From positions 1-64,000 of IMG/VR virus record IMGVR_UViG_3300046536_000256: a DNA stretch of 64,000 nt; one strand, 5' to 3'. The notes below the pieces were generated by a model that saw only the letters and a list, made by a program, of their open reading frames with translations, was not told the origin of the DNA and did no database searches. Below, piece by piece: positions 1,736 to 37,009 of the stretch; the stretch's first letter is position 1, and every line of letters starts with the position of its first letter. Both the position numbers and the translations under genes were made by a program.

Positions 1736-1750
1736 GTAATATAGGTTTGA
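1736..1750 (-). promoter_or_regulatory. putative early (virion RNAP) promoter TCAAACCTATATTAC
   Basis: Identical copies at 12117, 23066 and 36990; TATTAC core matches the phiKZ early-promoter consensus. Confidence 0.75.
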
Positions 1751-1766
1751 GTTTACCTAAGAGTTA

Positions 1767-2065: not shown

Positions 2066-2656
2066 TTACGAACCTTCTGGGTAGGTCAGCTGACCGTAAT
2101 CGGTATCAGGGATGGTGATGATCGCCTGAACACCCAGAGCAAATGGGATCTGACCGTAAATGGTCGGGCCGTCAACTGTTAGCTTGGCAGCGTCGGAAAC
2201 GATGTCACTACCCTGGATTACCACATGAACCGCGGTGGTAAATGCTACCTTGGCGGCAGCTTGCTGAGCGCCTACAGCGGTGCCGTACGGCAACAGAACA
2301 ATGATCTTGTCGGTGACCCCATCGACATCCTTGTAGGCATAAACCCCGGGAGTGCTTTGGGCTTTGACTGTGGCAAGGTCCGCCTGTACAACCGGATCAA
2401 CTAGGTCGTAGCCATCGGCGTTGTGCAGGTCGGCCGCATGGTAAGTTTGGTTGACCGCAATGAAGTTCCGAGTAGCGGATTTAACGGTTAGGGAACGGAC
2501 GTTGGTTCCGCTACCCGCGAGTAACTCAAACGATAGGTCACTTTCCGTCAGACCCGTAAACAGCGCCTTCATCGGAACGTCGTCCTTATAACGATCCAGA
2601 TTGAATTCGATGAAACGGTCAACGAAAAGACCCATACGGGTAGCTTTAGTGGCCAT
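2066..2656 (-). CDS. hypothetical protein, paralog of 2800-3372 (possibly virion-associated)
   Basis: Start reassigned to MATKATRMG (GGAG SD). Shares YKD..M.A.F.GLT..DL and PGVYAY motifs with its neighbour. Confidence 0.7.
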   Translation of the reverse strand: MATKATRMGLFVDRFIEFNLDRYKDDVPMKALFTGLTESDLSFELLAGSGTNVRSLTVKSATRNFIAVNQTYHAADLHNADGYDLVDPVVQADLATVKAQSTPGVYAYKDVDGVTDKIIVLLPYGTAVGAQQAAAKVAFTTAVHVVIQGSDIVSDAAKLTVDGPTIYGQIPFALGVQAIITIPDTDYGQLTYPEGS

Positions 2657-2742
2657 TGATGAAACTCCGGGAGGAAAGAGAATAGGGTACAGAGTAAAAA
2701 CCCTGTTACATAGTATCCAGCCGGAATTACGGTCAAGCATAA

Positions 2743-2799: not shown

Positions 2800-3372
2800 T
2801 TAGAGGTCCAGTACTTCTTCATCGTCCAGTGTCGCGACTGGAACGGCGGCGAGCACGTATTCAACGTCACCAACGATGGTGTCGCCGTTTACGGAGATCA
2901 CGCCGTCGCCCAGAGCGATCTGGTCAGCAGGGATGTCGTAACGCAGAGCAGCGTACAGAGCAACCGACGCGTCGGCAGCTTGGATTTCGGCGGCAGTGCC
3001 GGCGGCAATCACAACGATGTGTTTCATGCTGCCGTCTTCGGCCAGGTACGCGTACACGCCAGGGGCGGTCAGGGCTTCAACAGCCGCTTTGCTTTCCAGT
3101 GGCTCAGCAACGGTCAGGTCCAGGACCTTTTCGCTGTGAACGCTGGCTGGGCGCCATTTCTGGTCAGGACCGGAAGTGAAGCCACGGCTGGACGATTGAA
3201 CGTGGGCGCTGTGGATGCCGTTGGCTTTGGTGACAGCACCGATTTCCAGGTCTTCCAGGGTCAGACCGTCGAACTTCGCCAACATCTCCGGCTTGTCCTT
3301 GTAGATCGCTTGGTTCTTGGCCACGAATGGACCCAGCAGCAACAGCAGAGGCAACAGTTTTACAGTAGACAT
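2800..3372 (-). CDS. hypothetical protein, paralog of 2066-2656
   Basis: Start reassigned to MSTVK (GAGGTG SD); full-length similarity to the downstream gene. Confidence 0.7.
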   Translation of the reverse strand: MSTVKLLPLLLLLGPFVAKNQAIYKDKPEMLAKFDGLTLEDLEIGAVTKANGIHSAHVQSSSRGFTSGPDQKWRPASVHSEKVLDLTVAEPLESKAAVEALTAPGVYAYLAEDGSMKHIVVIAAGTAAEIQAADASVALYAALRYDIPADQIALGDGVISVNGDTIVGDVEYVLAAVPVATLDDEEVLDL

Positions 3373-3449
3373 AATTGGTAACACCTCAAGAGTAATTGAA
3401 TCGGAATGATTCCTGGGCTAGTCCCTAAGCATATAATCCAAGACAAGTG

Positions 3450-3668: not shown

Positions 3669-3730
3669 GCTTGGTCCCTGAAAGACAAAAAAGAAAAGGA
3701 AGGGTCAACAACCCCCTTCCTAACCTAGAG

Positions 3731-5434
3731 TTAACGCTTCATCGGTACAGCGGACAACTTGTCGCCCAGCAGGATGCTGCTTGCGTTGGCCAAGATCTTG
3801 GCAGTTTGCAAGCCGCCCTTCAGTGCGGTGATGGTAGCGTAGGCGGTGTCGTAAACCCCCAGCTCCTCACTGGTACCCGTCTCCCCGGTTGCCAGGTTGG
3901 TGCATGGAGGAACCACGTCACCCTCTATAGAGTTCCAGCGGAGTTCTTTGAACGGGGATACCTCGTCAGATGTCTGCCGCATCAGGTGGTTGTGCGAGGC
4001 GTAGCACACCTCGGCAAGCGCGGAGATGATCATGACCTTGATGGCGATTTCACGCTCATGCGGGGTGTCGGTGCCATCCTTGAATGGATCCGGCAGTTCC
4101 CTGTACAAACGAGTCAGAACACGCTTGCCCGCCGTTACCAGCGACGACCCCACGCCTGGCAACACACCGTTCACCAGAGCGCTCTTGACTGCCTTCACAA
4201 CGTCCTCGAACCGGTCAATGCGTTCTTTTACGTCCGAGTAGGTTTCGCCACCCACAAAGATCGTGATGAGCTCACCGCGCAGGTTACGGATACGCGTCTC
4301 GTTGAACTTGGCCCGCACACTGAAACGGTCACCCATTTCATACGAACTCAGTTCTTGTGCCACCGCATCAGCCCGAGCATTCAGCAACGCACGGGTTTCG
4401 TCGGGGATGTTGCTCAGGATCGAGCGAGTCCCATTGACAGTCAGGGTGCTCTGAACGATTGGAGCTCCGTGACTATTCAGCACGTCTTCCAAGTTGGTGT
4501 AGATCGGCGCGCCAAACATGGTCGCGATATCTTGCATCAACAGAGTGCCGACTGAACCACCGGCGTTGGTGTTGATAGCAACAAAGAACGCCGCGGGAAC
4601 ACCTTCCGGTTTACCAGTAACCCGTTCTTTAGCGCGCTGCGCTGCGGTAGCCGCGTTGAGGCGAGCCATGATCTGGCAAGTATCGTGTTCAACCGAACGA
4701 CCGATGACCAACACGGTACGACCACCTAGGCACATCGACAAGTTGATCAGCGTTTCCGAAAGGTCAGCCCCACGCCCCACATTACCGTCAATGATCAACG
4801 GGGTGAAGTCGGTGAAGTCGGTATCCCCACCATTGCCGTTCTTGGCAAAGCCTGGGTTACTGAACCCCATCTGAATCGGCAGGCCATTGGTGTGGACCAC
4901 TTTGTCTTCAGCCGTCTGCCCTTCCTTGAGTTCGATCTCAGGGTAGCGATCACCCGACGCCTTATAGATGTCGGTGATGATCTTGCTGAGTTCTTCGTCG
5001 TTGTTGGAGGAAGTCAGCGCCAGCTTGAACAGGCGTGGGTCGTCAACCGTAACGTTAACAGTCATGGCTTTCAGTTCTTCGATCACTGCGTTCATGCAGC
5101 TCTCAATGTACTTCTGTTCACGGAAGGTTGGGTGAGCGATAAAGACGTTGTACAACAACGACGTCAGCATCACGGTGGTGGTAGTGCCGTCGCCGCATTC
5201 GTGGTCGGTTTTGATCGCCGCTTCAGTAATCACGCGGTTGATCAGTTCGTGGCGTGGATCATCGAAGCGAATCGATTTAGCGACCGTCACGCCGTCCTTG
5301 GTGACCTTTACCGCGGTGCCGTTGGCAATGAACGCCAGCTTGCCGTTAGGACCCATGGTCGCGACTACAGCGCGTTTCACTTGGTCCACTACTTCTTTAA
5401 CGAATTCTTGGGTGTTAGCGATTGTTAGCATCAT
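3731..5434 (-). CDS. groEL: GroEL-like phage chaperonin
   Basis: TMGPNG, VTKDGVTVAKSI, GDGTTT ATP-binding motif, FED catalytic Asp region, GVLPGVG; 567 aa; no C-terminal GGM repeats. Confidence 0.95.
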   Translation of the reverse strand: MMLTIANTQEFVKEVVDQVKRAVVATMGPNGKLAFIANGTAVKVTKDGVTVAKSIRFDDPRHELINRVITEAAIKTDHECGDGTTTTVMLTSLLYNVFIAHPTFREQKYIESCMNAVIEELKAMTVNVTVDDPRLFKLALTSSNNDEELSKIITDIYKASGDRYPEIELKEGQTAEDKVVHTNGLPIQMGFSNPGFAKNGNGGDTDFTDFTPLIIDGNVGRGADLSETLINLSMCLGGRTVLVIGRSVEHDTCQIMARLNAATAAQRAKERVTGKPEGVPAAFFVAINTNAGGSVGTLLMQDIATMFGAPIYTNLEDVLNSHGAPIVQSTLTVNGTRSILSNIPDETRALLNARADAVAQELSSYEMGDRFSVRAKFNETRIRNLRGELITIFVGGETYSDVKERIDRFEDVVKAVKSALVNGVLPGVGSSLVTAGKRVLTRLYRELPDPFKDGTDTPHEREIAIKVMIISALAEVCYASHNHLMRQTSDEVSPFKELRWNSIEGDVVPPCTNLATGETGTSEELGVYDTAYATITALKGGLQTAKILANASSILLGDKLSAVPMKR

Positions 5435-5490
5435 TACAGATTACTCCAGAATACAAGGTTACAAAGTTAAAAGGTTAGGCTTACGTGTAA

Positions 5491-5505
5491 GTAATATAGG
5501 TCTGA
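5491..5505 (-). promoter_or_regulatory. putative early promoter TCAGACCTATATTAC
   Basis: One-mismatch copy of the repeated motif, ~55 nt upstream of the chaperonin start. Confidence 0.75.
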
Positions 5506-5520
5506 AAATATACAAATAAA

Positions 5521-5549
5521 TAAAGCTCTCCGGGTTAGGGAGAGCTTTA
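5521..5549. terminator. stem-loop, putative terminator
   Basis: TAAAGCTCTC / GAGAGCTTTA inverted repeat directly after the stop at 5555; A-rich flank gives a U-tract on minus. Confidence 0.65.
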
Positions 5550-5554
5550 CTCAG

Positions 5555-5860
5555 TTACTTACGGACTACGGGTTCCAACTGCACCAGACAGAACTTACCA
5601 TTGCGGTCCCAGAACTCAAACGTCGAGCTCGAGATAAAGCGATGGTGCACGTCGAGGTCGATGGTCACTTCGAGTTCAACACTGGTGTTCTTCAAGGCGA
5701 CTACCGCACCGATCATGTCGTTGGCGTAGTCTGGAATATCGCCCTCGAATTCCATGTAGACCTGGAGATCCCCGTCTTGAATCTGGTCGAACACCCGGTT
5801 CAATTGATCCAGGGTCAGGTTGTTAACGCACTTAACCTGATCCAATGGTGGGTTAGCCAT
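5555..5860 (-). CDS. hypothetical protein, paralog of 5860-6156
   Basis: 101 aa; aligns by eye with the upstream neighbour over its whole length. Confidence 0.7.
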   Translation of the reverse strand: MANPPLDQVKCVNNLTLDQLNRVFDQIQDGDLQVYMEFEGDIPDYANDMIGAVVALKNTSVELEVTIDLDVHHRFISSSTFEFWDRNGKFCLVQLEPVVRK

Positions 5861-6156
5861 CAGTGTCCTTCCTTACGTACCAGGTAGAACACGTTGGCCG
5901 GAGTTTGTACGAAGCGGAACTCGCCTTCGATCTTGCTCCTGCCATTCCAGTCTTTCAGCTCAAGGTAGACGTCCAGCTTTTTACCCAGGTTGTAAATCCC
6001 CTGAACCCGACCCAGCAGGTGATCGGTACTGACAGCTGCTACGGTTGGGTCAATACCGTAAACAACGTGGACACCCTCGTTCTTTTGCTGGTCCATCAAA
6101 CGCTTGAAACTATCAGCACTAAGTTTCTGAGCGAACTTCACGTTAGGCTGTGCCAT
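5860..6156 (-). CDS. hypothetical protein, paralog of 5555-5860
   Basis: 98 aa; stop/start overlaps on both sides. Confidence 0.7.
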   Translation of the reverse strand: MAQPNVKFAQKLSADSFKRLMDQQKNEGVHVVYGIDPTVAAVSTDHLLGRVQGIYNLGKKLDVYLELKDWNGRSKIEGEFRFVQTPANVFYLVRKEGH

Positions 6157-6701
6157 TACTCGGATTCCTTTTCAATGAGGTTTTGTTTCTGGATGTGGGT
6201 GAGGAGTTTCTCCAGAATGACATTGCCTTCTGGATATGAGAGTGGATCAAGGGGATCAACCGTTGCACCACTCTCAGTAAGGATAAAGGTGGGAACAACG
6301 CTAACGATTGGATACCGCCAACCGCGTAGTTCCTTGATCTCAGGAGTGGCCAAGAACGTCCAGGTGATCCCCATGCCGTTAAGGTTACAACGTGGATCAA
6401 ACAAACCAGCGTCTACCAATGCCTTCCACCGGGTATCAATCTCGAGCGGTGTTCTGGCGGTTACCCGTTCTACCATCTGGACGATGTCTTCGTCTTTGAT
6501 GTAAGTGTTATCCAGATGGGTGGTGGTAACGTTCCTGTGTGCCTGCCGAAGCTCTTCTGCTTCCCGGCGATGGCGGTTACCCGAGAACGTCATTTCCAAA
6601 CAACCGAAGGGTGCGTCACGAACTTCTTTAGTCCGAGTGTCACCACCCGAGCGTGTGACGCGTTCGCACAGCCACGCCCAACCTTTTCGCAACTGCTTCA
6701 T
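6156..6701 (-). CDS. hypothetical protein
   Basis: 181 aa, AAGGAG SD, coupled to the next gene. Confidence 0.7.
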   Translation of the reverse strand: MKQLRKGWAWLCERVTRSGGDTRTKEVRDAPFGCLEMTFSGNRHRREAEELRQAHRNVTTTHLDNTYIKDEDIVQMVERVTARTPLEIDTRWKALVDAGLFDPRCNLNGMGITWTFLATPEIKELRGWRYPIVSVVPTFILTESGATVDPLDPLSYPEGNVILEKLLTHIQKQNLIEKESE

Positions 6702-6721
6702 TGCAGTGCTCCTTATTTACC

Positions 6722-7240
6722 TTAGGTGTGTTTAACTGCTTTCGGTAGCTTTACTACCTGCGTCTTGCCGCCGGTATGAGGGTCCATATCCTTGGCAAGC
6801 TTAAGCGCCTTCTTGACACTTTTCCCCATCCGCAAAGCAGTGTCCACGTAAATCCCTCCCGACCCAATGGCCGTTGGAGGAAGACACTGCGTTAGAATGA
6901 AACTGTCCGGGATGTTGGGACCTTGCTTATAAGCCCCTTGCAGTAACCACCCATTATGAAACTCGTCGATCACGATGGCTGTAAAGTTCAGCTTGGACGG
7001 GATCTTCAAGTCGGTTCGATGGGTAATACCTTCCTTACACGCCAGCGCCTCTGTAAGGAAGGGTTCCACTCCAGGCATGCCGGCGCGACCAAAGGCAATA
7101 ACTTTCCGCCCCATGATCTTCCATTCTTCGCCCTCAGCCGGAGTCAGAATCTTCCGCACTTTTGCGTTGACCTTGGTCCCGTTGCGCGTGCGCATCGAAT
7201 CGGAAACCAGTTTGCCTTTAACCCAAACTACAGTAGTCAT
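6722..7240 (-). CDS. HslV/proteasome-beta-like Ntn-hydrolase peptidase
   Basis: N-terminal M-T-T nucleophile, D-S near residue 14, RKI lysine, AIGSGGIY (cf. HslV AIGSGGPY), terminal DPHTGG. Confidence 0.75.
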   Translation of the reverse strand: MTTVVWVKGKLVSDSMRTRNGTKVNAKVRKILTPAEGEEWKIMGRKVIAFGRAGMPGVEPFLTEALACKEGITHRTDLKIPSKLNFTAIVIDEFHNGWLLQGAYKQGPNIPDSFILTQCLPPTAIGSGGIYVDTALRMGKSVKKALKLAKDMDPHTGGKTQVVKLPKAVKHT

Positions 7241-7845
7241 ACTGTCTTCCTTGCTCGTTCTGTTATTACGATCTTCTGAATGGTCTGGGAGTACAGCTTT
7301 GGCCAGCTATCCGGAATATCGTCGCGATTAAAAATGGTCAGGGGAAAATGACTGGCGCGAGGATCGTCGAAGCTCTCGAACTGGGCGTCCGGAATCTCTT
7401 CCTCGTCATCAGGTTCATCGTCGGGACCATGCGCGTCGAACCAGTCATCCTGAGCGTCTTGGTCATGCGACTTCTCTTGCTCATCCACCTCCAAACGACG
7501 GAGATGTTTAGGCAGAGTTTGACACTCTTTGCACACGATCTTGGTCCACTTCTCCCGGGGGTATTCATCCACGAAATAAGGGGTGTGGGAGATCGCGTCG
7601 CAACGGGGTACTTCTTTCCCGCAGTCAGAACAGTCGACTGGTTCAGTTCGACGCTCTTCCAAGTACTTCACGTAGCACGGGTTACAGAGCAGATACATCT
7701 CCGAACCCATGCTGTCGTTCTCAGAAGTATGACCGTAAGCTTGATCACCTTCTTTCAGGTGTTCGCAATTACCGCCCTCGCAAACACCACCGCTCTCACC
7801 GAACCCCACAGATTTGGAGGTGCGCCCGTGAGTCATCCAGTTCAT
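7237..7845 (-). CDS. Cys-rich zinc-finger protein with acidic tail
   Basis: CEGGNCEH, CNPC, CSDC, CKEC, followed by a D/E-rich stretch. Confidence 0.65.
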   Translation of the reverse strand: MNWMTHGRTSKSVGFGESGGVCEGGNCEHLKEGDQAYGHTSENDSMGSEMYLLCNPCYVKYLEERRTEPVDCSDCGKEVPRCDAISHTPYFVDEYPREKWTKIVCKECQTLPKHLRRLEVDEQEKSHDQDAQDDWFDAHGPDDEPDDEEEIPDAQFESFDDPRASHFPLTIFNRDDIPDSWPKLYSQTIQKIVITERARKTV

Positions 7846-9410: not shown

Positions 9411-9851
9411 TTATCCGAGGATAATGATTTCGGCTTTAGGCGCGGCAACATCAACCGGCATTTTGTCGTCTGGCCAAACTTCGACACAAACACCCCTGTC
9501 ACCGTGCATGTCGGTGAGTTTGAAGGCCACCTCTCTTGGAATGGCCATTTCGTCGCTAGGGATGTAATGCTTACTGTTCTGGACAAGTAACCCGATCTTG
9601 ACTTCTTGCTCGATTGCGTTGGCTCGATCCATTTCAACAGCCAAAGCTTCTGGATCAACATCAGGAGTACGTGGGGTGGTCGTGAGCACACCAATACCAC
9701 CAGCCTTGACGCGAGCCTTGTTGAAGTCGTCCATCGACATGGTCTTCGTTGGCTCTTGCATCGACTGACGAATCATTTGCTGGAAAGCCAGTGCTTCTTG
9801 TTCCAGCGCCGCATTAAGACGACGGATAGCTTTTGCACGTTTACCGTTCAT
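9411..9851 (-). CDS. hypothetical protein
   Basis: 146 aa, overlaps the upstream stop. Confidence 0.7.
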   Translation of the reverse strand: MNGKRAKAIRRLNAALEQEALAFQQMIRQSMQEPTKTMSMDDFNKARVKAGGIGVLTTTPRTPDVDPEALAVEMDRANAIEQEVKIGLLVQNSKHYIPSDEMAIPREVAFKLTDMHGDRGVCVEVWPDDKMPVDVAAPKAEIIILG

Positions 9852-11051: not shown

Positions 11052-11513
11052 TTAAAAGCGGAAAGTAGTTTTAACAACCCGACCTTGCTCGATCGAGGTG
11101 TCATACAACGGTTGAGGTTCATTCACCTTAGCCGGCTGATACAGGTAAGTGCAAGATGTGTAGATATCCTTCACATCCAAGTCTGATGGGTTACCAACGG
11201 TAACCGTGGCCATACCTTTACCGTCATCGGAGATAAACAGCATCCGATGACGACTGGCCTGATAATAGGCTCGCACTACACCCTTCAAGTCAGAGGCATC
11301 GGGGTTGACTGCCGTGTACGAGTTACCGCCATGAACCACCCCTGTGCCGGTCAGAATAAACCCATTGGTAATAGGTTGAATCTGAGTAACCCCTGGATCA
11401 CCCTGCCCTGTGGCGTGTTCGTACTCACCGCACAGGATACCGTTTGGAATGTCATCGGCTACAGCGGATAGCGACAACAGCGAAACTACTACGCCTACGA
11501 ACAACGATTTCAT
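11052..11513 (-). CDS. exported/periplasmic protein
   Basis: Sec signal MKSLFVGVVVSLLSLSAVA, beta-rich mature part, two Cys. Confidence 0.7.
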   Translation of the reverse strand: MKSLFVGVVVSLLSLSAVADDIPNGILCGEYEHATGQGDPGVTQIQPITNGFILTGTGVVHGGNSYTAVNPDASDLKGVVRAYYQASRHRMLFISDDGKGMATVTVGNPSDLDVKDIYTSCTYLYQPAKVNEPQPLYDTSIEQGRVVKTTFRF

Positions 11514-12116: not shown

Positions 12117-12131
12117 GTAATATAGGTTTGA
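12117..12131 (-). promoter_or_regulatory. putative early promoter TCAAACCTATATTAC
   Basis: Exact copy of the repeated motif in an AT-rich intergenic region. Confidence 0.75.
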
Positions 12132-12148
12132 AACTTAATGTAAGTTAA

Positions 12149-23065: not shown

Positions 23066-23080
23066 GTAATATAGGTTTGA
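23066..23080 (-). promoter_or_regulatory. putative early promoter TCAAACCTATATTAC
   Basis: Exact copy of the repeated motif. Confidence 0.75.
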
Positions 23081-23110
23081 GTAATTGTAAAAATCAATTT
23101 AACGAACATA

Positions 23111-36989: not shown

Positions 36990-37004
36990 GTAATATAGGT
37001 TTGA
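36990..37004 (-). promoter_or_regulatory. putative early promoter TCAAACCTATATTAC
   Basis: Exact copy of the motif, 5 nt past the SbcC stop. Confidence 0.75.
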
Positions 37005-37009
37005 AATTA

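What the first reader, a model, noticed from the sequence alone, without database searches (positions are those of the whole stretch)
3731..7240. Possible phage proteostasis module: chaperonin plus HslV-like Ntn peptidase
Seen: a 172-aa protein with Met-Thr-Thr start, conserved D/K positions and AIGSGG(I)Y 1.3 kb from the chaperonin. Established: proteasome beta and HslV subunits use an N-terminal Thr exposed by Met removal. No HslU-type ATPase is present in the window. Inference: an ATPase-independent or host-HslU-dependent protease that could destroy host defence proteins or misfolded phage proteins.
Basis: partly seen in the sequence, partly recalled or inferred. Interest (0 to 1): 0.6.

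Follow-up and report, generated by a model that had tools for sequence, protein, structure and literature searches.

The report
Phage proteasome-like peptidase beside chaperonin
A 233-kb soil (rhizosphere) phage carries a small proteasome-like peptidase gene, one of three copies, 1.3 kb from its own chaperonin gene; the two are transcribed separately and sit together only in the closest relatives, so this is a new member of a described but uncharacterised phage protein family, not a demonstrated "proteostasis module".

Summary
Window 6722-7240 (-) encodes a 172-aa protein starting Met-Thr-Thr. It has the Asp/Lys/Gly-Ser-Gly catalytic set of proteasome beta/HslV. Its stop lies 1,287 bp from the start of a 567-aa chaperonin gene (3731-5434, -; 44% identical to phage EL gp146).

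The fold is confirmed: AF2 pLDDT 92, Z 16 to HslV and to 20S beta5, with Thr2 aligned on Thr1. The whole 233-kb phage genome has no HslU or other AAA/AAA_2 ATPase.

"HslV" is too narrow a label. The curated HslV and Proteasome models do not match, and helix H2 is missing. [quoted passage not shown] 2021), a family with no known function.

The "module" is not supported:
- A strong terminator and an EL/phiKZ-type promoter separate the peptidase operon from a monocistronic chaperonin gene.
- The two genes are adjacent only in this phage and two close relatives.
- They are 131-137 kb apart in EL and another relative. No peptidase lies within 10 kb of the chaperonin in RisingSun or USC-1. SPN3US has the peptidase but no chaperonin.

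This gene is a lineage-specific third paralog; the ancestral locus, beside PhuZ, holds two more copies. The likeliest function is an ATPase-independent Thr peptidase made early in infection. That is inferred, not shown.

The parts
6722..7240 (-). PPH-type (HslV-like) N-terminal-threonine peptidase gene, 172 aa. Nucleophile Thr2; Asp14, Lys30, Gly126-Ser127-Gly128, Asp153, Thr156.
   Evidence: ORF; phrog_1040 E 3.5e-22; AF2 pLDDT 92; HslV/beta5 Z 16; hhalign to E. coli HslV prob 91%; residue conservation.
7237..7845 (-). Cys-rich 202-aa protein (g202, phrog_8344, unknown function). Its stop overlaps the peptidase start (ATGA). It is adjacent to the peptidase in all three genomes of the clade, in varying order.
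   Evidence: 93 kb from the peptidase in SPN3US.
6156..6701 (-). 181-aa protein with no family match, 20 nt downstream of the peptidase gene. It has a 41% identical homolog in G001; no match was found in the G002 locus.
5860..6156 (-). 98-aa protein, homolog of EL gp144 (34% identity). It marks the EL-syntenic chaperonin neighbourhood.
5555..5860 (-). 101-aa protein of unknown function, the last gene of the operon that holds the peptidase.
5517..5553 (-). Intrinsic terminator (15-bp stem, U-rich tail) ending the peptidase operon.
   Evidence: scan; -20.6 kcal/mol, z -7.5, 0 of 200 shuffles; a hairpin at the same place in G001 and G002.
5491..5507 (-). Promoter motif TTTCAGACCTATATTAC (EL/phiKZ type), 57 nt upstream of the chaperonin start codon.
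   Evidence: published consensus for EL WTTTYAAACCTACATTATY and phiKZ TATATTAC (PMC7058600); same position in EL, G001, G002, G003.
3731..5434 (-). Phage chaperonin (GroEL/Cpn60 family, EL gp146-like), 567 aa, carrying the GDGTTT motif.
3700..3716 (-). Terminator-like hairpin with a T-run just after the chaperonin stop codon.
   Evidence: -13.5 kcal/mol, weak z of -1.9.
12117..12133 (-). Nearest upstream promoter motif of the same class (TTTCAAACCTATATTAC). It heads the 6.6-kb same-strand gene array that contains the peptidase gene.
   Evidence: No further motif lies between 5507 and 12117, even at 3 mismatches.

Best explanation
Gene 6722-7240 encodes a catalytically competent N-terminal-threonine peptidase of the phage branch of the proteasome/HslV superfamily (PPH type, lacking helix H2). 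It is not a bona fide HslV.

Inferred mechanism: host methionine aminopeptidase removes Met1. The free Thr then acts as nucleophile with Asp14 and Lys30. Gly126-Ser127-Gly128, Asp153 and Thr156 support the site as in 20S beta subunits.

Three observations point away from an HslU-type partner. The helix H2 region is deleted; my recollection, not verified here, is that in HslV this region forms part of the surface that HslU contacts. The family fails the HslV models. The phage encodes no AAA+ unfoldase. The enzyme therefore most likely works without one, on peptides or on unfolded or disordered proteins, as proposed for BPH and the uncapped 20S.

The gene lies in a long operon headed by an EL/phiKZ-type promoter, a class reported as early in OBP, so it is probably made early in infection.

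It is a lineage-specific third paralog. The ancestral locus, beside PhuZ as in EL gp15, holds two more copies with intact catalytic residues.

Its position next to the chaperonin gene is a local arrangement shared with two close relatives. The chaperonin is a separate monocistronic unit. No evidence ties the two functionally.
For: Fold and active site:
- AF2 pLDDT 92, pTM 0.87.
- Foldseek top hit is HslV 1g3i (E 1.6e-6).
- VIA Z 16.1 to HslV 4g4e (rmsd 2.6 over 145 aa, 26% identity), tied with beta5 at Z 15.8; model Thr2 aligns on Thr1.
- All 81 PDB sequence hits to the profile are proteasome beta, HslV or BPH.
- hhalign to E. coli HslV aligns MTT, D14/D17, K30/K33 and GSGG.
- The catalytic set is invariant in 120 relatives, and selection is purifying.

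Not HslV:
- No hit to NF003964, TIGR03692 or PF00227, while the E. coli HslV control scores 304 and 288 bits.
- The model has only one short helix (59-67) between strands 45-54 and 84-92.
- hhalign shows a gap of about 17 residues there.
- The family-wide median for that segment is 29 residues.
- PPH/RPC are described as lacking H2 (PMC8665760).

No unfoldase.

Transcription: and PMC7058600.

Paralogy and synteny.

Linkage survey.
Against: - No activity, oligomer state, substrate or expression data exist for this protein or for any PPH.
- BPH, the nearest ATPase-free analogue, showed no activity in standard assays (PMC5777263), so 'active peptidase' is not guaranteed.
- The self-association test gave no answer.
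- Independence from HslU is inferred from a missing helix and from gene absence. The host is unknown (rhizosphere metagenome) and may well have HslU.
- Early expression rests on promoter-motif similarity only; no RNA runs hold this DNA.
- PPH membership was not tested by direct comparison with the published representative.
- Adjacency to the chaperonin is kept in three genomes, so some local functional tie cannot be excluded.
Confidence: 0.6

Rival explanations
1. Host-HslU-dependent protease. The phage subunit assembles into HslV-like rings that dock on the host's HslU. This would redirect or poison the host HslUV system during infection.
For: HslV is the closest solved relative by identity (22-26%) and by hhalign. 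There is no propeptide, as in HslV. No phage ATPase exists. The relatives with named hosts infect Gammaproteobacteria, which from general knowledge carry HslUV; this phage's own host is unknown.
Against: Helix H2 is deleted. HslU binding is reported to induce structural changes at the HslV pore region that follows H2 (PMC5777263); that H2 forms part of the HslU contact surface is my recollection, not checked here. The curated HslV models give no hit at all. Fuchs et al. found no AAA+ co-occurrence for PPH. BPH, also descended from HslV, lost its HslU-interface residues and did not pull down HslU.
Confidence: 0.15
2. A real proteostasis pair. The peptidase and the phage chaperonin act together (fold-or-degrade triage of phage or host proteins), and their adjacency reflects that.
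For: The genes lie 0.9-1.8 kb apart in three related genomes. Both units follow the same promoter class. EL-like phages and G003 also carry both genes somewhere in the genome.
Against: The two genes are in separate transcription units, divided by a strong terminator. They are 131-137 kb apart in EL and G003. No peptidase lies within 10 kb of the chaperonin in RisingSun or USC-1. SPN3US-like phages have the peptidase without a chaperonin. The three genomes with adjacency are syntenic over the whole region, so they count as one evolutionary event. The ancestral peptidase locus is beside PhuZ, not the chaperonin.
Confidence: 0.1
3. Not a general protease. It could be an Ntn enzyme with another chemistry or a narrow target: a ligase or transpeptidase like connectase, an amidase, or a site-specific processing enzyme for one phage or host protein.
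For: The proteasome-like superfamily includes the ligase connectase, and some members are predicted not to form rings (PMC8665760). Loss of H2 may alter assembly. A Cys-rich gene (g202) is tightly coupled to the peptidase in all three genomes and could be a partner or a substrate.
Against: The full proteasome catalytic set, including the Asp166/Ser169 equivalents, is conserved. Nothing specific points to another chemistry. g202 homologs are 93 kb away from the peptidase in SPN3US.
Confidence: 0.12
4. Subunit of a hetero-oligomeric particle built from the phage's three paralogs, analogous to the diversified beta subunits of eukaryotic proteasomes.
For: There are three paralogs in this genome and in G003, two in G001 and G002, and one in EL. 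All three copies here keep the catalytic residues. The third G003 copy starts Met-Ser-Thr and has Arg where Lys30 should be, as in a diverging subunit.
Against: EL manages with one copy. The paralogs are only 25-35% identical and lie in different loci and transcription units.
Confidence: 0.1

Closest known systems
[quoted passage not shown] Equivalent annotation: PHROG 1040 'peptidase HslV family'.
   Same: Occurs in tailed phages. Has an N-terminal Thr without a propeptide, the Thr/Asp/Lys triad, a compact subunit that lacks helix H2, and no co-occurring AAA+ partner. Function is unknown. The 244-aa paralog at the EL gp15 locus carries a C-terminal extension as RPC does.
   Different: At 172 aa it is longer than the typical ~140 aa; profile hits run continuously from 133 to 181 aa. 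There are three paralogs in one jumbo-phage genome, one of them placed beside a chaperonin gene. Direct clustering with the published PPH representative was not tested.
Bacterial HslV (ClpQ), the peptidase of the HslUV ATP-dependent protease
   Same: Best solved structural match (Z 16, 22-26% identity). Shares the Met-Thr-Thr start, Asp17, Lys33 and the GSGG motif.
   Different: No hit to the HslV equivalog HMMs. Helix H2 is missing. It carries the 20S-like Asp-x-x-Thr/Ser-Gly-Gly motif. No hslU is encoded by the phage.
BPH (Betaproteobacteria proteasome homolog), PMC5777263
   Same: A group I descendant of HslV with no propeptide, no known unfoldase and a proposed ATP-independent role. It is among the profile and fold hits.
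   Different: BPH keeps H1-H4, has a long acidic pore loop, and is a bacterial heptameric double ring. The oligomer state of the phage protein is unknown.
Phage EL gp146 chaperonin. From my own knowledge it is an experimentally characterised, co-chaperonin-independent phage GroEL homolog.
   Same: The window's 567-aa protein is 44% identical over 99% of its length. It has the same flanking genes (EL gp144, gp147, gp148 homologs) and the same promoter motif upstream. No Cpn10 is found in the genome.
   Different: In EL no proteasome-like gene lies near gp146; EL's single copy (gp15) is 131 kb away beside PhuZ.
Erwinia phage RAY gp116 ('HslVU protease family', nucleus-localised; Prichard et al. 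2023 preprint)
   Same: A jumbo-phage protein named after the HslUV system.
   Different: gp116 is a 569-aa HslU/ClpX-type AAA+ ATPase (AAA_2, AAA), not the peptidase. The peptidase profile finds nothing in RAY, and gp116 has no relative in this genome. Its nuclear localisation therefore cannot be transferred to this protein.

Membership tests
HslV (NCBIfam TIGR03692 / NF003964 equivalogs) | Score above the curated cut-off of the HslV models | tested here: not met
   No hit even at E<=10 for the window protein, its two paralogs or EL gp15. The E. coli HslV control scores 303.8 and 288.2 bits.
HslV | N-terminal Thr directly after Met, plus Asp17, Lys33 and Gly-Ser-Gly | tested here: met
   hhalign to E. 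coli HslV aligns MTT, D14/D17, K30/K33 and GSGG. These residues are invariant in 120 relatives.
HslV | Full alpha-beta-beta-alpha sandwich with helices H1-H4 and a short pore linker after H2 | tested here: not met
   The AF2 model has only helix 59-67 between strands 45-54 and 84-92. hhalign shows a gap of about 17 residues in the H1/H2 region.
HslV | Cognate HslU AAA+ partner encoded with it | tested here: not met
   TIGR00390, PF07724 and PF00004 are absent from the complete 233-kb genome, with controls positive. No relative of RAY gp116 is present. A host-encoded HslU cannot be examined because the host is unknown.
HslV | Dodecamer of two hexameric rings | tested here: inconclusive
   Complex prediction with 3 copies returned no answer. 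This needs experiment.
PPH (Fuchs et al. 2021) | Lacks helix H2 while keeping the S1-S11 core and the catalytic triad | tested here: met
   definition in PMC8665760.
PPH | Found in tailed phages and prophage regions, without an AAA+ neighbour | tested here: met
   63 phage records at E<=1e-3, spanning jumbo and 40-55 kb phages. Viral fold matches. Atlas clusters are 63-91% viral.
PPH | Compact size of about 140 residues | tested here: inconclusive
   172 aa here. The profile search links it at E 1e-10 to 1e-17 to many 135-148-aa proteins; the median of the best 120 is 154 aa.
PPH | Clusters by sequence with the published representative WP_042125023.1 | not tested
   The sequence is not on hand. 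The supplement holds no sequences, and the accession look-up of NCBI-sourced hits did not return it.
20S proteasome beta subunit (Pfam PF00227) | Pfam gathering score; propeptide | tested here: not met
   No PF00227 hit at E<=0.1. The start is Met-Thr with no propeptide. The fold match to beta5 is nevertheless as good as to HslV (Z 15.8).
PHROG 1040 'peptidase HslV family' | Profile match | tested here: met
   E 3.5e-22, 80 bits, residues 1-168.
Cpn60/GroEL chaperonin (EL gp146 type), for the neighbouring gene | Cpn60_TCP1 domain above cut-off; GDGTTT nucleotide motif; full-length similarity to EL gp146 | tested here: met
   84.4 bits against a cut-off of 34.3. GDGTTTT is in the translation. 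44% identity over 99% of the length.

The most novel reading that the evidence does not exclude
The PPH paralogs of this phage lineage form a virus-owned, AAA+-independent proteasome-like particle, possibly hetero-oligomeric and possibly regulated by the tightly coupled Cys-rich g202 protein. Made early in infection, the particle would selectively remove host proteins (defence or quality-control factors). The extra chaperonin-adjacent copy would then have been recruited to work alongside the phage chaperonin as a fold-or-degrade pair.
Probability: 0.08. Interest if true: 0.75.

Novelty: new member of a known kind. Interest (0 to 1): 0.3.

Why it matters
Proteasome-like peptidases of phages (PPH) were described in 2021 as the first truly viral members of the proteasome family. 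The literature searched here reports no function, structure, partner or expression data for them.

This genome and its relatives offer a compact comparative system:
- One to three paralogs per genome, all with intact catalytic residues where examined, except one diverged G003 copy.
- An ancestral locus beside the PhuZ tubulin gene.
- A derived copy beside the chaperonin gene.
- No phage unfoldase.

Cultured relatives (EL gp15, SPN3US gp1) make the question testable: what does a virus do with an ATPase-less proteasome homolog?

The finding itself does not change the picture. The protein family is already annotated in phage databases, the chaperonin is an EL gp146 homolog, and the proposed module is not borne out.

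Tried and rejected
- Nuclear-localisation lead. A preprint reports RAY gp116 ('HslVU protease family') inside the phage nucleus. gp116 turned out to be a 569-aa HslU-type ATPase. The peptidase profile finds nothing in RAY. The lead was dropped.
- Self-association. Complex prediction with 3 copies gave 'no answer' (score 0.00, controls not run). This is not evidence either way.
- g202 structure. AF2 on a 4-sequence alignment gave pLDDT 54, too poor to search.
- g202 as a conserved partner. Its homologs in SPN3US-like phages lie 93 kb from the peptidase, so linkage is local only.
- Near-identical DNA in the phage collection: none.
- Single-sequence phmmer against PDB: no true hit. The profile was needed.
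- First word search: only 5 close relatives. The alignment query reached 206.
- Phylogeny of 19 family members: the deep nodes are unresolved. The chaperonin-linked copies form a clade (86/92), but duplication versus transfer cannot be decided.
- Direct tie to the published PPH representative: the supplement search and the accession look-up found nothing.
- RNA evidence: only four rhizosphere DNA runs hold the stretch and none is RNA.
I re-ran it reading the locus by reference.
- The large representative search was not used, because the family scans had already placed the protein.


Full report
**What is there**

The window is the first 64 kb of a complete 233,283-bp IMG/VR virus record with direct terminal repeats. 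Its DNA is held by rhizosphere metagenome runs.

Between 8618 and 3731 all genes run on the minus strand, in this order:
- a 201-aa gene (phrog_8970);
- a 53-aa ORF;
- g202, a 202-aa Cys-rich protein (phrog_8344);
- the 172-aa gene of the finding (6722-7240);
- g181, g98 and g101;
- the 567-aa chaperonin gene (3731-5434).

The protein starts MTTVVW, has D14 and K30, and contains TAIGSGGIYVD. The peptidase stop and the chaperonin start are 1,287 bp apart.

**The peptidase**

Pfam and NCBIfam give no hit. PHROG 1040, 'peptidase HslV family', matches at E 3.5e-22.

An AF2 model built on 13 relatives is confident (pLDDT 92, pTM 0.87). Its matches are:
- Foldseek top hit HslV 1g3i;
- VIA-align Z 16.1 to HslV 4g4e (rmsd 2.6 over 145 residues, 26% identity), tied with 20S beta5 at Z 15.8;
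- model Thr2 aligned on the catalytic Thr1 in both cases.

A profile of the family hits only proteasome beta, HslV and BPH chains in the PDB (best E 6.6e-5). That alignment also brings out the 20S-type Asp166-x-x-Ser169-Gly motif (here D153-P-H-T156-G-G). hhalign against E. coli HslV (prob 91%, E 1e-6) aligns MTT, D14/D17, K30/K33 and GSGG.

In the 120 best of 206 profile hits, M1, T2, D14, K30, G126 and G128 are invariant. S/T127, D153 and T/S156 are kept in 117-118 sequences. Against the two orthologs, pN is 0.14-0.20 while pS is saturated at 0.73-0.74.

The fold and an intact Ntn active site under purifying selection are therefore shown. Catalysis itself is inferred.

**Why it is not simply HslV**

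- The curated HslV equivalog models and Pfam Proteasome do not match, whereas E. coli HslV scores about 300 bits.
- The model has a single short helix (59-67) where HslV and beta subunits have H1 and H2.
- hhalign shows a deletion of about 17 residues at that place, and the short segment is family-wide (median 29 residues).

[quoted passage not shown] It is about 140 aa, occurs in Caudovirales and prophages, and together with RPC is the only group lacking H2. They found no AAA+ co-occurrence or telling genomic context for these new homologs, and no function is known.

The window protein fits that description. The profile search connects it continuously to many 135-148-aa proteins on phage-sized contigs. 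I could not compare it directly with the published representative.

**No unfoldase**

TIGR00390 (HslU), AAA_2 and AAA are absent from the whole genome while all control genomes ring. The HslU-like gp116 of phage RAY has no relative there. Cpn10 is also absent, as expected for an EL-type chaperonin.

**Paralogs and synteny**

The genome has three copies: the window gene, plus a tandem pair at 146,313-146,849 (178 aa) and 146,852-147,586 (244 aa, with a C-terminal extension). All three start MTT and keep D, K and GSG.

A comparison with phage EL shows two things:
- The tandem pair occupies the position of EL's single copy, gp15, between the gp13/gp14 homologs and PhuZ (gp16).
- The chaperonin neighbourhood is also EL-syntenic (g98 ~ gp144, chaperonin ~ gp146, g194/g224 ~ gp147, g192 ~ gp148), but EL has no peptidase there.

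The window gene is thus an extra, lineage-specific paralog. Relatives carry two copies (G001, G002), three in tandem (G003) or one (EL).

**Transcription architecture**

Immediately after g101 lies a 15-bp-stem hairpin with a U-rich tail (-20.6 kcal/mol, z -7.5). It is followed by TTTCAGACCTATATTAC at 5491-5507, 57 nt upstream of the chaperonin start. A second terminator-like hairpin follows the chaperonin gene.

The promoter motif is clearly non-random:
- The core ACCTATATTAC occurs 5 times in the window against 0.45 expected.
- It occurs 15 times in the genome, always on the minus strand.
- It matches the published EL (WTTTYAAACCTACATTATY) and phiKZ (TATATTAC) promoter consensus. The related OBP promoter was judged early (PMC7058600).
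- It precedes the chaperonin gene in EL, G001, G002 and G003.
- It precedes the tandem peptidase pair at 147,681.

No further copy lies between 5507 and 12,117, even at three mismatches. The window peptidase therefore belongs to the gene array headed by the motif at 12,117-12,133. The chaperonin gene is a separate monocistronic unit.

Early timing is an inference from motif class. No RNA data exist.

**Is there a chaperonin-peptidase module?**

| Genome | Arrangement |
|---|---|
| G000 (this phage), G001, G002 | adjacent; peptidases 68-75% identical; whole region syntenic, so one evolutionary event |
| EL | 131 kb apart |
| G003 | 137 kb apart |
| RisingSun, USC-1 | no peptidase ORF within 10 kb of the chaperonin; positive controls recovered |
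| SPN3US | peptidase (gp1) present, no chaperonin |

Small temperate-type phages carry the gene in the nin/terminase-proximal accessory region.

**Most likely function**

My best reading (confidence about 0.6) is an ATPase-independent Thr peptidase of the PPH family, made early and acting on peptides or unfolded or disordered proteins.

The shown steps are the fold, the catalytic residues, the conservation, the absence of a phage unfoldase, the separate transcription unit and the paralogy.

The inferred steps are Met removal, ring assembly, activity, independence from host HslU, timing and substrates.

Four rivals remain open and are listed with their tests:
- a host-HslU-dependent protease;
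- a true pair with the chaperonin;
- a non-protease Ntn chemistry or a narrow processing role;
- a hetero-oligomer of the paralogs.

**Verdict**

The gene is a new member, in an interesting multi-copy setting, of a known but uncharacterised phage family. The neighbouring chaperonin is an EL gp146 homolog. The 'module' is a local gene arrangement without support from transcription or from wider comparative data. Interest is modest (0.3).

Noticed in passing
outside the window: G000 146313-146849 and 146852-147586 (loci L002/L003): Two further proteasome-like paralogs sit in tandem (178 aa and 244 aa; the longer has a C-terminal extension of about 70 aa). They occupy the position of EL gp15 beside PhuZ and are preceded by the same promoter motif at 147,681. 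Both start MTT and keep the catalytic residues.
   Followed up: partly
window 1736-1752, 5491-5507, 12117-12133, 23066-23082, 36990-37006 (all - strand); 15 sites genome-wide: The promoter-like motif TTTCARACCTATATTAC matches the published EL/phiKZ consensus. Every copy is on the minus strand and far more copies occur than expected (5 against 0.45 in the window). It looks usable for mapping this phage's presumably early transcription units.
   Followed up: partly
window 7237-7845 (-); L005 10519-11112; L006 9564-10004 and 10549-10896: The Cys-rich g202 family (conserved C27/H29/C54/C57 core, acidic tail) is always directly coupled to the chaperonin-side peptidase. It comes before the peptidase here, after it in G001, and on both sides in G002. 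It could be a partner, a regulator or a cassette mate. The AF2 model was too poor to use.
   Followed up: partly
L007 11274-11894 (G003, third tandem paralog): This copy starts Met-Ser-Thr (Ser instead of Thr as nucleophile). By spacing it has Arg where Lys30/Lys33 should be. It may be a diverging or inactive subunit.
   Followed up: no
window 2066-2740 and 2800-3384 (-): Two paralogous genes (224 and 194 aa) lie just downstream of the chaperonin. Both are homologs of EL gp147 and match PHROGs 18233, 32964 and 21620 (virion structural protein).
   Followed up: no
window 11052-11513 (-); homolog at L006 8510-9037: A 153-aa protein with a signal-peptide-like N-terminus (MKSLFVGVVVSLLSLSAVA) sits in the same promoter-headed operon as the peptidase. 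This suggests an exported product, probably early.
   Followed up: no
window 9411-9851 (-): The last ~40 residues of this 146-aa protein match PHROG 3295, 'RNA polymerase beta subunit' (E 1.2e-9). It may be a fragment or a small RNAP-related protein.
   Followed up: no
Erwinia phage RAY KU886224.1 86352-88061 (L029): RAY gp116, reported as nucleus-localised, is an HslU/ClpX-type AAA+ ATPase. So some nucleus-forming phages carry an HslU-like unfoldase, whereas this phage carries only peptidase homologs. A relative of RAY (Special G) has a protein with a proteasome-like fold in BFVD.
   Followed up: partly
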